Source: Macrostomum lignano
Taxonomy: Eukaryota
Assembly: GCA_002269645.1 (NCBI GenBank)
Contig: NIVC01002767.1
Coordinates: forward strand, 78,205-142,204
Reading direction: 5' to 3'
Length of the DNA: 64,000 nucleotides
Shown: positions 1-53,802 of the stretch, one piece after another
Numbering within the stretch: the first letter of the stretch is position 1
Layout: the number at the start of each line of letters is the position of its first letter
The notes under the pieces: generated by a model
Database searches by the model: none
Seen by the model: only the letters and a program-made list of their open reading frames with translations
Told to the model about the DNA's origin: nothing
Made by a program: the position numbers and the translations under genes

Positions 1-3000
1 TCGCTCAGGCCGGCCTTCGGGACGCGGAGGCGGCACCGCCTGCTCAGCCGCCGCACCAGCCGAGCGGTGGAGGCGTGGCGGAGCACCTCGTCGGATGCGG
101 CGATCAGCAGCAGCGACGGTGGCGGCGGCCGCTTCGCTCCGACAACCGGAGTCAGGACAGCCAGGAAGAGCAGCAGCATCAGCAGCAGCAGCAGCAGCAG
201 CAGCGGCTTGTGGAGCTCGGCACCGCCGCCAGTCACGGATTGCGCCGCATCGATGCTGACGGTGTCGGCGAAGCGGCAGGCGGCCGACCGTTCGGGCTGC
301 ACCAGCCGCAGCAGGTTGAAGCTGCTGTCAACCCGAGCCGCGTCAGCCAGCCAGAACTTCCTGAACTGATTCGGCCTCTGCCAGGCGGATGCGTTCTGGT
401 GAAGGCGAGCACGGAGGGATCAGTCTGCACCCTTGGATGCTGTTTGACTCAGTAATCCGGCTGCCAAGCCTCGCCTAAACAAAACAATGCATCAATTCGT
501 CAAATTGGCGGAGCTCACCAGCTGCATTCTGATGCAGCGCTTGTTAACTTCGCGGGGGACGCTTAGCTGGAACTGACCGCTCATAGACCAACCCGGTTTC
601 TAAAAAATAATATATAAGAAAATGTAGAATCCAACTAGCTAAGTAACTAACTAACTAACTAACTAACTAACTAACTAACTAACTAACTAACTAACTAACT
701 AACTAACTAACTAACTAACTAACTAACTAACTAACTAACTAACTAACTAACTAACTAACTAACTAACTAACTAACTAACTAACTAACTAACTAACTAACT
801 AACTAACTAACTAACTAACTAACTAACTAGCTAACTAACTAACTAACTAACTAACTAACTAACTAACTAACTAACTAACTAACTAACTAACTAACTAACT
901 AACTAACTAACTAACTAACTAACTAACTAACTAACTAACTAACTAACTAACTAACTAACTAACTAACTAACTAACTAGCTAACTAACTAACTAGCTAACT
1001 AACTAACTAACTAGCTAACTAACTAACTAACTAACTAACTAACTAACTAACTAACTAACTAACTAACTAACTAACTAGCTAACTAACTAACTAACTAACT
1101 AACTAACTAACTAACTAACTAACTAACTAGCTAACTAACTAACTAGCTAACTGACTAACTAACTGACTAACTAACTCGGCCAGCTCACACTGGGGAACAG
1201 CAGGGTGACCGCAGCTGACATGAACTTCAGCTCCAAGCTCCTGGACCCGCAGTTCAGCAGGCCTGCCGTCAGGTTGCAGGCGCCGCCGCCGTCGGCCAGC
1301 AGACATCCGGGATCATCCAGGCCGAACTGCGCAAAGCAGCGGGGCTTCGGAGACGCCAGCAGTCGCAGATGAGTCCTGCTCAGGCAAACTCCGGTCCCGT
1401 TCCGCCTGATCCTGGCGCCGTGGACGGCGAAAGTCAGCCAGTTGACTCTGTCCAGCAGCAGCTGCAGGCGGAGCCGAAGGCTGCCCAGTTTCGCCTGCCG
1501 GACCGTCGGGCTGACGCTGAACCGCTGGCAGGCGCTGCTGCTGCTTCTGTCGTGGTTGTAGCTGGCGATGGTGACGGCCAGGGAGTCATCAGGCTGGCCG
1601 CGGCCGAGGTCCAGCTGGAGGCCGGCCCGCCAGGACCCCGGCCGGTCCGGAACAGCCTGGAAGCTCGTGCGGAGCAGCGGGTCCGAGGCTGGGCTGCTGG
1701 CGTCTGCTATAGAGTAGCGACAGCGGGACGAAGTCGGAGCTGCGGGATCTGAGCAGTTGGAGGGGTCTGTTCTGACTCGTCCAGGCTGCGGCTTCTGTTG
1801 ATCCCCGGACCTCCTCTTGAGGGGAGTTTGGGGAGGGATTTGGGAAGTCTGAGGTGTTGGGAGTTGGAAGGTTTGAGGAGTCGGGAAGTTTGAGGAGTCG
1901 GGAAGCTTGAGGAGTTGGGAAGTTTGAGGAGTCGGGAAGTTTGAGGAGTCGGGAAGTTTGAGGAGTCGGGAAGTTTGAGGAGTCGGGAAGTTTGAGGAGT
2001 CGGGAAGTTTGAGGAGTCGGGAAGTTTGAGGAGTCGGGAAGTTTGAGGAGTCGGGAAGTTTGAGGAGTCGGGAAGTTTGAGGAGTCGGGAAGTTTGAGGA
2101 GTCGGGAAGTTTGAGGAGTCGGGAAGTTTGAGGAGTCGGGAAGTTTGAGGAGTCGGGAAGTTTGAGGAGTCGGGAAGTTTGAGGAGTCGGGAAGTTTGAG
2201 GAGTCGGGAAGTTTGAGGAGTCGGGAAGTTTGAGGAGTCGGGAAGGTTTGAGGAGTCGGGAAGTTTGAGGAGTCGGGAAGTTTGAGGAGTCGGGAAGCTT
2301 GAGGAGTCGGGAAGCTTGAGGAGTCGGGAAGTTTGAGGAGTCGGGAAGTTTGAGGAGTCGGGAAGTTTGAGGAGTCGGGAAGTTTGAGGAGTCGGGAAGT
2401 TTGAGGAGTCGGGAAGTTTGAGGAGTCGGGAAGTTTGAGGAGTCGGGAAGTTTGGGGAGTTGGGAAGTTTGAGGAGTCGGGAAGTTTGAGGAGTCGGGAA
2501 GTTTGAGGAGTCGGGAAGTTTGAGGAGTCGGGAAGTTTGGGGAGTTGGGAAGTTTGAGTATAGTAGTTAGGAAGTTTTAGGAGTTAGATTTTTCAGATTA
2601 GACTCTTAGCTGTGGCTTTGCATAGGGCTGCAGGGCCGGGCCCCATAGAATAAAAAGTTTTTCCTCACTCACCGTCAATGTTGCTGGAGAATTCACAGTT
2701 GATAGACTCGCAGCCGGGTCCGAACAGCTGGGCTGCTGGATCAGAGCTCTCCTGCATGTTTGGCAGCGAGGCGGGTTTAGTGCAATTTTTTAGTTCTAGT
2801 GGGGAGTTCCGTACTCTTCTACCCTTCAGCTTCTATGGCTCCGCTCTCTTCTACCCTTCAGCTTCTATGGCTCCGCTCTCTTCTACCCTTCAGCTTCTAT
2901 GGCTCCGCTCTCTTCTCCGCACTTCAACTTCTATGGCTCCGCTCTCATCCGCCCTTCAGCTTCTATGGTTCTGCTCTCTTCTCCGCCCTTCAGCTTCTAT

Positions 3001-52561: not shown

Positions 52562-53802
52562 TCAAGACGCTGATGCCTCATCAGCCTCTGAGTCTGAGTC
52601 AGTCGCGTAGGCGGCTAAAAGCGACACCGCGGCATCCTTTGCCTCAGGTTTCGCTTCTGTCTTTGAATCGGCGACCGACTTTGCCGGAGGCTGAGACTGA
52701 GACGATGCCTCATCATTGCCGCCAGCTGAGTCAGTGTGCAATTTTCGTTTCACGGCAACAGCCCGGCCCAGCAGACTGCGCTGGGCGCTGGTCTTTTTGG
52801 GACCGGCGCCAGACGAGTTGGAGACGCTGATCGACACAGTCACAGGCGCGGCGGTGACGTCTCCAGCGCTCGGATCTGCCGCGGGCTTGCGGCCCTGCAC
52901 CGCACGGTTGTAGGCCTCGATGAGGGCGCGGTCCTCGGCGCGGCGTTGGCGCTCCTCTTCGGCTTGGCGCTTGGCCAGGTCGGACAGAAACTGAGCCTCG
53001 TCCTCCGTGATGCGGGACACCTGCCGGCGGCGGGGTGATTGGTCCACTTTGGGAACTGGAATAATTACATTAATCTACAGTACTGACTACTCAAGTAGTG
53101 TTTGGAGGTGTCCTGAGAGAGGAGCGCGTCCAAGGAAAGGCGTGTCCAGAGAAGATTTCTAGGCAAAGGATATACTGGTAAAAAACTGTCCATTGCGTCC
53201 TGGGAAAGGCTATCTAGGGTGTCCTGGGAAAGGGTCCATGGTGTCTTCGCAAAGGGTCTATGGTGTCCTGAGAAAAGCTGTCCAGGGTGTCTTAGTAAAG
53301 CTGTCCAAAGTGTCCTGGGAAGGGTCCATAGTGTCCTGGAAAATGGTGTCCAGGGTGTCTTAGGAAAGGCTGTCCAGAGTGTCCTGGAAAAGGCTGTCCA
53401 GGGTGTCCTGGGTGTCCTTGGATGGAAAGGGTACATGGTGTCCTGGAAAAGGCTGTTCTGAGGAGGCGATCCAAGGCTGCCGAGTAAAGGGTGCCCAGAC
53501 AAAGAGGACGCCCTCCATACGAAATGGAATTACAATAGGGAATTGTTAAGTTAGCTTTTTGATACTGGTAGCCAGTTTAGTAAGTAGTATAAAGCGGCTT
53601 TTATTATCTCAGAAACCTGATTTCGTAACGCGTGCTGCTCCTCATATTCTGCTTGCTTTTTGTCTTTCTGCTCCTGCAGACGCTCATAGAGGGAGCGCGG
53701 GTCGTATGGCTCCTGCTCTTCATCGCCCTGGCCGCCTCGTTCCAGTTTCCGCTGCTGGGCAATGTCAGCCAACTGCTTCTCCGATATGAACCGGCGCTCC
53801 AT
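52562..53802 (-). CDS. PSME3IP1: PSME3-interacting protein (FAM192A/NIP30), 2 exons, ~214 aa
   Basis: Exons 53802-53617 and 53020-52562. RRFISE...[44 protein letters not shown] is the NIP30 domain; C-terminal LLAAYATDSDSE. The ATG directly follows acceptor aaagtcag|. Confidence 0.92.
53170..53460. repeat. Degenerate repeat (GTGTCCTGGAAAAGGCTGTCCAGG) in the PSME3IP1 intron
   Basis: Imperfect tandem units. Confidence 0.75.

What the first reader, a model, noticed from the sequence alone, without database searches (positions are those of the whole stretch)
1..53802. Eleven co-oriented, tightly spaced genes over 54 kb: candidate very long trans-spliced operon
Seen: every recognisable gene from PSME3IP1 to the receptor-like gene is on the minus strand. 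Stop-to-next-start gaps are about 1.5, 1.9, 2.3, 1.2, 1.15, 2.0, 1.1, 1.25, 1.4 and 2.4 kb. Every spacer contains a minisatellite array, and most follow the same plan: AT-rich 3' UTR (AATAAA e.g. 21387-21392, 15313-15318), array, then a splice-acceptor AG at or within ~25 nt of the next start (aaagtcag|ATG PSME3IP1; ccgcag|tcaggcatattATG MFSD14; catgtag|..ATG SSB2; caagtag|cacaATG ORC3; cattag|cagccggagacATG RPL35A), with no upstream non-coding donor exon that I could identify. Known: flatworms use spliced-leader trans-splicing and have polycistronic clusters of functionally unrelated housekeeping genes. Inference: this is a single or nested polycistronic unit, unusually long, with its promoter right of 53.8 kb facing away from the DEG/ENaC gene.
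Basis: partly seen in the sequence, partly recalled or inferred. Interest (0 to 1): 0.85.

Follow-up and report, generated by a model that had tools for sequence, protein, structure and literature searches.

The report
Flatworm co-oriented trans-spliced gene cluster
This is a run of ten (perhaps eleven) same-strand housekeeping genes in the flatworm Macrostomum lignano that are spliced-leader trans-spliced and already annotated as several short multi-gene transcription units; this kind of repeat-padded operon is known in this species, and a single 54-kb operon is not shown.

Summary
The window is Macrostomum lignano Mlig_3_7, contig NIVC01002767.1:78205-142204 (100% match).

Three details fail:
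- Minisatellites are not a spacer feature. They fill 17 of 18 introns of at least 400 nt and 42% of the region.
- An AG within 25 nt of an ATG occurs by chance at 70% of positions.
- GenBank annotates a plus-strand ORF (7084-7563) between RPL35A and the weak eleventh gene.

Trans-splicing is well supported.
- GenBank CDSs of LZTR1, gelsolin and VPS51 are 5'-partial and begin exactly after an acceptor.
- At SSB-a, SSB-b, SLC25A32 and RPL35A the acceptor has been overwritten by the spliced-leader tail (..TGCATG). This artefact of RNA-seq polishing marks the junctions.
- ORC3 is published as TRANSSPLICED.

Locus-tag prefixes show published transcription units joining LZTR1-MFSD14-SSBa, SSBb-SLC25A32 and ORC3-RPL35A. 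No published unit joins the whole cluster. Gelsolin also has its own ATG exon and a TATA-like box.

Best reading: a chain of short operons of the known M. lignano repeat-inflated kind. A single 10-gene operon remains possible and would slightly exceed the published maximum of nine. Interest is low to moderate.

The parts
52562..53802 (-). G1 PSME3IP1/FAM192A. Two exons, 53802-53617 and 53020-52562. The ATG follows 'aaagtcag|' directly.
   Evidence: Pfam FAM192A_Fyv6_N; sequence; model. Not in the GenBank gene set of this contig.
44379..51083 (-). G2 LZTR1 (kelch/BTB), 6 exons. The GenBank CDS PAA55362.1 (Mlig010006g2, partial) starts at 51032, immediately after 'tttccag|'.
   Evidence: Pfam; P0243 100% identical.
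35438..42490 (-). G3 MFSD14/HIAT1, 6 exons.
   Evidence: Pfam MFS_1; 99% identical to M. lignano A0A1I8FYS5; sequence.
32271..33092 (-). G4 SSB-like a, single exon. The GenBank 5'-partial CDS starts at 33089. The 'ATG' at 33092-33090 is probably an SL-tail footprint over a CAG acceptor.
30099..31093 (-). G5 single-stranded-DNA-binding protein b (PAA55360.1, Mlig002114g2). SL-tail footprint TGCATG at 31093-31088; the exon begins at 31087; ATG at 31063.
   Evidence: Paralogue A has TTACAG at the same place.
26543..28958 (-). G6 SLC25A32 (PAA55359.1, Mlig002114g7, partial). CDS starts at 28955. The acceptor reads CTG here and ATG in both paralogues.
   Evidence: Pfam Mito_carr.
21417..24625 (-). 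G7 gelsolin/severin-like. TATATATAG at 24625-24617. Exon 1 has its own ATG at 24536. The GenBank 5'-partial CDS starts at the exon-2 acceptor, 24365. AATAAA at 21392-21387.
   Evidence: Pfam Gelsolin.
15366..20291 (-). G8 VPS51 (PAA55357.1, Mlig030090g3, partial), 5 exons. The ORF begins at 20288, directly after 'gtttcag|', with no in-frame genomic ATG.
   Evidence: Pfam VPS51_Exo84_N; exact 769-aa model found on the contig; paralogue B has ATG in place of CAG.
10343..14113 (-). G9 ORC3 (681 aa in GenBank). Published as TRANSSPLICED and neoblast-enriched.
   Evidence: Pfam ORC3_N and ORC_WH_C.
8546..8961 (-). G10 RPL35A. ATG at 8929. The GenBank 5'-partial CDS starts at 8956. Inferred junction 8959|8958, with the acceptor reading CTG here and ATG in paralogue A.
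1..6171 (-). G11, a putative membrane protein that runs off the window. This is a weak gene call.
   Evidence: Codon scan; syn>=nonsyn against the paralogues; no Pfam hit; absent from GenBank genes.
7084..7563 (+). GenBank-annotated ORF (159 aa) on the opposite strand, between G10 and G11. It probably does not encode a conserved protein.
   Evidence: Against the paralogues it shows 15 nonsynonymous and 5-6 synonymous changes and is only 77% covered. Poor codon score.
53803..54334 (-). About 530 nt upstream of G1 that is still shared with paralogue A. This is the candidate outron or promoter of the first gene. Beyond it the copies are unrelated.

Best explanation
The region is a co-oriented block of ten solid genes (G1-G10) in Macrostomum lignano. 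It is transcribed as a chain of short SL-trans-spliced polycistronic units of roughly 2-4 genes each, not demonstrably as one unit.

Proposed mechanism: RNA polymerase II reads through neighbouring genes. Each upstream mRNA is cleaved and polyadenylated. Each downstream mRNA gets its 5' end by trans-splicing of the 35-nt spliced leader at a YAG acceptor. Because the leader ends in AUG, it supplies the start codon where the ORF begins directly at the acceptor (VPS51, LZTR1, SLC25A32, SSBa, and the exon-2 form of gelsolin).

The 1.1-2.4 kb spacers are ordinary short intercistronic or intergenic regions inflated by the minisatellites that fill nearly all non-coding DNA here, introns included.

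Some genes, clearly gelsolin, also have their own promoter ('hybrid' operon behaviour).

Shown: organism, gene models, strand, spacing, array distribution, annotation-level trans-splice junctions, and shared transcription-unit names.
Inferred: that the 5'-partial CDS starts are SL junctions, which genes share a precursor in this particular copy, and where promoters lie.
For: 1. Identity. The window matches GCA_002269645.1 NIVC01002767.1 at 100%. MFSD14 is 99% and LZTR1 100% identical to M. lignano proteins.
2. Species background. The SL is 35 nt and ends in ATG. About 30-39% of genes are trans-spliced and about 15% lie in operons. Operon spacers are inflated by repeats, with a repeat-adjusted mode near 100 bp and a 1-kb cut-off. 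About 7% of assembled transcripts are multi-gene precursors.
3. Junctions. GenBank CDSs flagged 'partial' begin exactly after acceptors for LZTR1 (tttccag|), VPS51 (gtttcag|) and gelsolin exon 2 (aggag|). A random position follows a YAG only 2.8% of the time.
4. SL-tail footprints. Among the three paralogous copies the acceptor triplet alternates between CAG and ATG/CTG, or TTACAG and TGCATG, exactly at the annotated 5' ends of VPS51, SSBb, SLC25A32 and RPL35A. SSBa has ATG in all copies. The assembly was Pilon-polished with RNA-seq, which explains this.
5. ORC3 is listed as TRANSSPLICED.
6. Locus-tag prefixes are names of transcription-unit clusters. Different neighbouring genes share them: Mlig034073 = LZTR1 g1 + SSBa g3; Mlig003527 = MFSD14 g1 + SSBa g4; Mlig002114 = SSBb + SLC25A32; Mlig033121 = RPL35A g1 + ORC3 g6.
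7. Unique (non-array) spacer sequence is 375-874 bp for 7 of the 10 gaps.
8. Arrays run to within about 20-65 nt of the 5' ends of VPS51, SLC25A32 and RPL35A. This leaves little room for a private core promoter.
Against: - No RNA data could be examined directly. Junctions are inferred from CDS coordinates and from the polishing artefact.
- The published units do not bridge 4 of the 9 spacers between G1 and G10, and VPS51 has a unit name of its own.
- StringTie can merge adjacent same-strand genes through read-through without true operon processing.
- 60% of trans-spliced M. lignano genes are not in operons, so trans-splicing alone does not prove polycistrony.
- Three spacers keep 1.4-2.0 kb of unique sequence (G3->G4, G6->G7, G10->G11). 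That is ample for promoters.
- The prefix argument rests on the naming rule as described in the methods, not on inspection of the unit models.
Confidence: 0.6

Rival explanations
1. One promoter upstream of 53.8 kb drives a single precursor of about 45-54 kb through G1-G10 (or G11). That precursor is resolved entirely by SL trans-splicing and polyadenylation. The breaks between published transcription units would be mapping artefacts caused by the arrays.
For: - All ten genes are co-oriented.
- At least 8 of them are trans-spliced.
- Most repeat-adjusted gaps fall under their 1-kb criterion.
- Order and orientation are retained in all three paralogous copies.
- The published maximum is nine genes, in 'two operons'. 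Those could conceivably be copies of this locus; this is speculation.
Against: - Gelsolin has its own ATG-bearing first exon with a TATA-like box about 85 nt upstream.
- Some array-containing spacers were bridged by the assemblers and others were not, so arrays alone do not explain the breaks.
- G3->G4 and G6->G7 keep 1.4-1.6 kb of unique sequence.
- The G10->G11 gap holds a plus-strand annotated transcript.
- Paralogy is recent (90-98% identity), so conserved order says little.
Confidence: 0.2
2. This is a tandem of independent genes. Each has its own promoter in the AT-rich unique part of its upstream spacer, and each transcript is trans-spliced as a monocistronic outron-bearing RNA. Co-orientation would be historical, and the shared transcription-unit names would reflect transcriptional read-through merged by the assembler.
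For: - 60% of trans-spliced M. lignano genes are not operonic.
- Spacers carry 375-1957 bp of unique sequence at 32-48% GC.
- Regions of up to 2 kb upstream suffice as promoters in this species.
- AATAAA lies close after several stops.
Against: - A run of ten same-strand genes has p of about 0.002.
- Four separate pairs or triples of neighbours share transcription-unit names across three genome copies.
- Arrays abut the trans-splice sites of VPS51, SLC25A32 and RPL35A.
- The genome authors interpret such units as precursor mRNAs.
Confidence: 0.2

Closest known systems
Macrostomum lignano SL trans-spliced operons and 'transcriptional units' (Wudarski et al. 2017, PMC5730564; Ustyantsev & Berezikov 2021, PMC8629364)
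   Same: Same species and same assembly. The genes are co-oriented, conserved housekeeping or neoblast genes. Downstream genes are SL trans-spliced at YAG acceptors. Intercistronic spacers are inflated by tandem repeats. Multi-gene precursor transcripts are annotated.
   Different: Published operons are 75% two-gene units, with a maximum of nine genes. Here ten genes are co-oriented, but the public units cover only 2-3 genes each. Several repeat-adjusted gaps (about 0.4-0.9 kb including the 3' UTR; three above 1.3 kb) are well above the 100-bp mode.
Caenorhabditis elegans operons, including 'hybrid' operons with internal promoters
   Same: Unrelated housekeeping genes lie on one strand. Resolution is by 3'-end formation plus SL trans-splicing. 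Units hold 2-8 genes. Some downstream genes have promoters of their own.
   Different: C. elegans uses a dedicated SL2 for downstream genes and spacers of about 100 nt. M. lignano has a single known SL, which ends in AUG. Its spacers here are 1.1-2.4 kb and largely minisatellite.
Kinetoplastid and dinoflagellate polycistronic transcription units
   Same: Long unidirectional gene runs, with a strand switch at the start of the run and every mRNA capped by an SL.
   Different: In those groups all genes are trans-spliced, units contain tens to hundreds of genes, and there are no gene-specific promoters. Here only about a third of the genome's genes are trans-spliced, cis-introns are abundant, and at least one gene in the run has its own 5' exon and a TATA-like box.
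Polycistrons of parasitic flatworms (Schistosoma, Echinococcus)
   Same: A flatworm SL ending in AUG (author's knowledge). Small polycistrons of unrelated genes.
   Different: Few genes are involved and the intercistronic distances are short. No minisatellite-padded spacers have been described.

Membership tests
SL trans-spliced operon (M. lignano definition of Ustyantsev & Berezikov 2021) | Adjacent genes on the same strand with no opposite-strand transcript between them | tested here: met
   Met for G1-G10. Not met for G10->G11, where a plus-strand GenBank ORF lies at 7084-7563.
SL trans-spliced operon (M. lignano definition of Ustyantsev & Berezikov 2021) | The downstream gene is SL trans-spliced | tested here: met
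   The evidence is indirect. 5'-partial CDSs start at acceptors (LZTR1, gelsolin exon 2, VPS51). SL-tail footprints are present at SSBa, SSBb, SLC25A32 and RPL35A. ORC3 is published as TRANSSPLICED. MFSD14 and PSME3IP1 have only a plausible acceptor. SL reads themselves could not be inspected.
SL trans-spliced operon (M. lignano definition of Ustyantsev & Berezikov 2021) | Repeat-adjusted distance between transcripts below 1 kb | tested here: inconclusive
   Unique stop-to-start sequence is 773, 837, 1648, 431, 375, 1393, 398, 874, 801 and 1957 bp. Seven of ten are below 1 kb even with the 3' UTR included. True poly(A) sites and interspersed repeats are not known here, so G3->G4 and G6->G7 are undecided.
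SL trans-spliced operon (general) | One precursor RNA from one promoter covers the member genes | tested here: inconclusive
   Shared transcription-unit prefixes imply assembled transcripts spanning LZTR1..SSBa, MFSD14..SSBa, SSBb+SLC25A32 and ORC3+RPL35A in at least one copy. Nothing spans the whole cluster. No RNA reads were available.
SL trans-spliced operon (general) | Absence of internal promoters | not testable with these tools
   Only a sequence hint is available: TATATATAG at 24625-24617 and a private ATG exon for gelsolin. This suggests at least one internal promoter.
Kinetoplastid-type polycistronic transcription unit | All genes trans-spliced, tens of genes per unit, no cis-introns or gene-specific promoters | tested here: not met
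   There are 25 cis-introns in the modelled genes. Only 30-39% of the species' genes are trans-spliced.

The most novel reading that the evidence does not exclude
G1-G10 (PSME3IP1 to RPL35A, about 45 kb) form one operon resolved by a single AUG-donating spliced leader, with gelsolin's promoter nested inside. It would be the largest operon known in a flatworm: ten genes against the published maximum of nine. It would also be a case where polymerase must read through more than 20 kb of minisatellite arrays. In addition, the SL-tail footprints left by RNA-seq polishing would give a DNA-only way to map trans-splice sites across the whole Mlig_3_7 assembly.
Probability: 0.2. Interest if true: 0.45.

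Novelty: new member of a known kind. Interest (0 to 1): 0.3.

Why it matters
For biology, the finding adds little that is new. M. lignano is already known to have SL trans-splicing, operons and repeat-inflated intercistronic spacers. This locus's multi-gene transcription units are already implicit in the GenBank locus tags.

If the whole ten-gene run proved to be one unit, it would modestly extend the size range of flatworm operons. It would also give a test bed, in a species where transgenesis works, for how transcription and 3'-end formation cope with kilobases of minisatellite between cistrons.

The practically useful by-product concerns the assembly. In Mlig_3_7, acceptor sites at trans-splice junctions have been partly overwritten by the spliced-leader tail.
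- This creates false ATG start codons, for example SSBa at 33092-33090.
- It destroys real CAG acceptors.
- It also flags trans-splice sites directly in the DNA sequence.
Users of this assembly for gene models, promoter cloning or CRISPR design should know about it.

Tried and rejected
1. Exact look-ups of my first RPL35A and SSBa ORFs found nothing. The GenBank CDSs are 5'-partial versions. Once this was realised, the look-ups worked.
2. The first homology search, with an LZTR1 exon, gave only two about-50% hits from unrelated compact genomes with no synteny. The first chimeric query was swamped by villins and carriers and missed M. lignano. For a while this wrongly suggested an unsequenced lineage.
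3. Rfam and tRNA scans of the window found nothing.
4. Supplement searches in three further papers for the transcription-unit ids found nothing or no files.
5. Exact GenBank proteins for ORC3 and gelsolin could not be reconstructed. The splice combinations were ambiguous, and four ORC3 models were not in the collection. Their locus tags on this contig therefore remain unknown.
6. I considered a possible SL footprint inside gene 11 at 1782 and dropped it, because paralogue A is identical to the window there.
7. TGCATG alone is not enriched (21 sites against about 19 expected; it is a palindrome), so it cannot be used without the paralogue or annotation context.
8. I considered a kinetoplastid- or dinoflagellate-like unit before the organism was known. 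I rejected it on the grounds of canonical cis-introns, metazoan gene content and then the identification.
9. The bacterial promoter/terminator scanner was not used because it does not apply.
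Full report
WHAT THE WINDOW IS.
The sequence is about 48% G+C. TRF arrays make up 38% of the window and 42% of 1-53802. A chimeric protein query returned a 99% match to a Macrostomum lignano MFS protein, A0A1I8FYS5. 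An LZTR1 exon matched a 797-aa protein at 100%. That protein is GenBank PAA55362.1 on contig NIVC01002767.1 of assembly GCA_002269645.1 (Mlig_3_7). The fetched locus is 100% identical to window 34379-61032. The window is therefore NIVC01002767.1:78205-142204, and its right end is the end of the contig.

CHECKING THE OBSERVATION.
Pfam, homology and manual models give ten solid genes, all on the minus strand:
- PSME3IP1/FAM192A (53802..52562)
- LZTR1 (51083..44379)
- MFSD14 (42490..35438)
- two single-stranded-DNA-binding-like genes (33092..32271 and 31063..30099)
- SLC25A32 (28949..26543)
- a gelsolin/severin-like gene (24536..21417)
- VPS51 (20288..15366)
- ORC3 (14113..10343)
- RPL35A (8929..8546)

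A codon-usage log-likelihood scan places every strong coding segment of 1-53.8 kb on the minus strand. This includes exons that were not used for training.

Four points weaken the observation.
1. GenBank annotates a 159-aa ORF on the plus strand at 7084-7563, inside the last gap. Its codon usage is poor. Against the two paralogous copies it shows 15 nonsynonymous and 5-6 synonymous changes and is only 77% covered, so it is probably not a conserved protein. It is nevertheless an annotated opposite-strand transcript.
2. The eleventh, 'receptor-like', gene has no Pfam hit and is not in the GenBank set. Only codon bias and a synonymous-rich substitution pattern support it.
3. The 'spacer plan' is not specific to spacers. 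Nineteen of 25 introns, and 17 of 18 introns of at least 400 nt, contain arrays. Simple and tandem repeats are 15% of this genome overall.
4. An AG within 25 nt upstream occurs at 70% of random spacer positions, so that argument has no force.

EVIDENCE FOR TRANS-SPLICING, READ FROM THE ANNOTATION AND THE ASSEMBLY.
M. lignano has one known 35-nt spliced leader, CGGTCTCTTACTGCGAAGACTCAATTTATTGCATG, ending in ATG. About 30-39% of its genes are trans-spliced. The GenBank gene set was built by cutting transcripts at SL-read peaks.

On this contig the CDSs flagged 'partial' start exactly after acceptors:
- LZTR1 at 51032 (tttccag|TTG)
- VPS51 at 20288 (gtttcag|GCC)
- gelsolin at 24365 (aggag|TCC, exon 2)

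VPS51 has no in-frame genomic ATG at all. The leader's AUG must therefore supply its start codon, or an undetected upstream exon must.

The other partial CDSs (SSBa 33089, SSBb 31081, SLC25A32 28955, RPL35A 8956) do not follow an AG. Comparing the three paralogous copies of the cluster explains why (contigs NIVC01002767, NIVC01002245 and NIVC01002230; collinear, 87-99% identical). At exactly these junctions the copies differ by replacement of the acceptor with the leader's tail:
- VPS51: CAG in the window and paralogue A, ATG in paralogue B.
- SSBb: TTACAG in A, TGCATG in the window and B.
- SLC25A32: CTG in the window, ATG in A and B.
- RPL35A: CTG in the window and B, ATG in A.
- SSBa: ATG in all three.

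The assembly was polished with Pilon using RNA-seq as well as DNA reads. SL-bearing reads have evidently overwritten the last bases of the outron. This is an artefact, but it marks the trans-splice sites. It also means that the apparent start codon of SSBa (33092-33090) is probably false.

ORC3 is listed as TRANSSPLICED and neoblast-enriched in a published table. In total, eight of the ten solid genes have evidence of trans-splicing. MFSD14 and PSME3IP1 have only plausible acceptors (ccgcag| and gtcag|).

EVIDENCE FOR POLYCISTRONIC UNITS.
Locus tags BOX15_MligNNNNNNgM carry the name of a transcription-unit cluster, defined by cd-hit at 95%, plus a gene number. Different neighbouring genes share prefixes:
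- Mlig034073 = LZTR1 (g1) and SSBa (g3) on paralogue A, with MFSD14 lying between them.
- Mlig003527 = MFSD14 (g1) and SSBa (g4) on paralogue B.
- Mlig002114 = SSBb and SLC25A32 on all three contigs.
- Mlig033121 = RPL35A (g1) and ORC3 (g6).

Two non-overlapping genes can share a cluster name only if some assembled transcript contains both. The genome authors' own data therefore include precursors across G2-G3-G4, G5-G6 and G9-G10. VPS51 has a prefix of its own (Mlig030090). LZTR1 on this contig is Mlig010006g2; whether g1 is PSME3IP1 is unknown. No name spans the whole cluster.

HOW THIS COMPARES WITH WHAT IS KNOWN.
Ustyantsev and Berezikov described exactly this situation. Operon spacers in M. 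lignano are inflated by repeats, and transcription units split in repeat-rich spacers. After subtracting repeats, the distance between trans-spliced genes peaks near 100 bp, and they used 1 kb as the cut-off. Three quarters of operons have two genes, and the maximum is nine genes, in two operons. The longest published transcription unit is 51.6 kb.

Here the non-array part of the spacers is 375-874 bp for seven gaps and 1393-1957 bp for three. Arrays come within about 20-65 nt of the junctions of VPS51, SLC25A32 and RPL35A, which leaves little room for private core promoters. On the other hand, gelsolin has a first exon with its own ATG and a severin-like N-terminus, and TATATATAG lies about 85 nt upstream. 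It therefore very probably has its own promoter as well as an SL site at exon 2.

VERDICT.
- Best reading (0.6): a chain of short operons or hybrid units within a co-oriented block.
It cannot simply include gene 11.
- Fully independent genes (0.2): disfavoured by the shared unit names and by the co-orientation (p of about 0.002).

The proposed promoter 'facing away from the DEG/ENaC gene' is not supported. That ORF has no Pfam hit. It lies 6.5 kb away, across an AT-rich, transposon-bearing block. Only about 530 nt upstream of PSME3IP1 is shared with paralogue A.

The kind of system is known in this very species, and its parts are already in the public annotation, so interest is low to moderate.

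Noticed in passing
window 33092-33090, 31093-31088, 28958-28956, 20291-20289, 8961-8959 (minus strand); same sites in L004, L006, L009, L010: In some of the three paralogous copies, the acceptor sites at trans-splice junctions are replaced by the spliced-leader 3' tail. CAG becomes ATG or CTG, and TTACAG becomes TGCATG. The likely cause is the published Pilon polishing with RNA-seq. The artefact creates false start codons and destroys real acceptors in Mlig_3_7, but it also marks trans-splice sites in the DNA.
   Followed up: yes
window 14976-14963 and 9426-9416 (minus strand): CAATTTGTTGCATG matches 13 of the last 14 nt of the SL and sits in the VPS51->ORC3 spacer in all three paralogues. It is followed by a possible short exon with a GTGATT donor. 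CAATTTATTGC, an exact 11-nt piece of the SL, sits in the ORC3->RPL35A spacer. These could be an unannotated trans-spliced 5' UTR exon, a larger polishing footprint, or chance (roughly p = 0.02-0.05 each).
   Followed up: partly
window 7084-7563 (+): This is the GenBank-annotated 159-aa ORF on the opposite strand. It has a PIP-box-like QTRIEDFF motif and AATAAA about 85 nt downstream. Its codon usage is poor, its substitution pattern against the paralogues looks neutral (15 nonsynonymous, 5-6 synonymous), and it is not annotated in the paralogous contigs.
   Followed up: partly
window 24625-24365 (minus strand): Gelsolin/severin-like gene. Exon 1 has its own ATG (24536) and a TATA-like box (24625-24617). 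GenBank, however, starts a 5'-partial CDS at the exon-2 acceptor (24365). This suggests that cis-splicing from exon 1 and SL trans-splicing are alternative uses of the same acceptor.
   Followed up: partly
window 9978-10219, 10951-11699, 16966-17123, 17781-18238: The same 28-nt minisatellite unit (TGGGAGGCTGGCCCAGCAACTGAGGATC) forms arrays at four separate places: one spacer, one ORC3 intron and the third VPS51 intron (two arrays). This indicates a dispersed, possibly element-borne minisatellite family. The ORC3-intron array keeps an open frame, so it merges into a spurious 723-aa ORF.
   Followed up: no
window 6417-6503 and 6643-6729: An 87-nt inverted repeat, 83% complementary. Its arms contain a tRNA-like B-box (GGTTCGATTTCC) and a 'GCAAGACACTTAAC' core reminiscent of tRNA-derived SINEs. 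ARAGORN finds no tRNA there.
   Followed up: no
window 54335-60300: An AT-rich block (32-36% G+C) between the cluster and the plus-strand ORF at 60363-61844. It contains a Penelope-like GIY-YIG ORF (57849-58319, minus strand). It has no counterpart upstream of PSME3IP1 in paralogue A, so it is probably a copy-specific transposon insertion.
   Followed up: partly
It is absent from the GenBank gene set of this contig. Only a TM1-plus-'WPDLTFCN' motif recalls the family.
   Followed up: partly
L011+L006+L009 (NIVC01002245.1) and L004+L010 (NIVC01002230.1) versus the window: The whole cluster exists in three collinear copies, 87-99% identical in unique sequence. They differ mainly in array lengths. 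This fits the hidden polyploidy and extra chromosome of the DV1 line. The transcription-unit partition differs between copies.
   Followed up: partly
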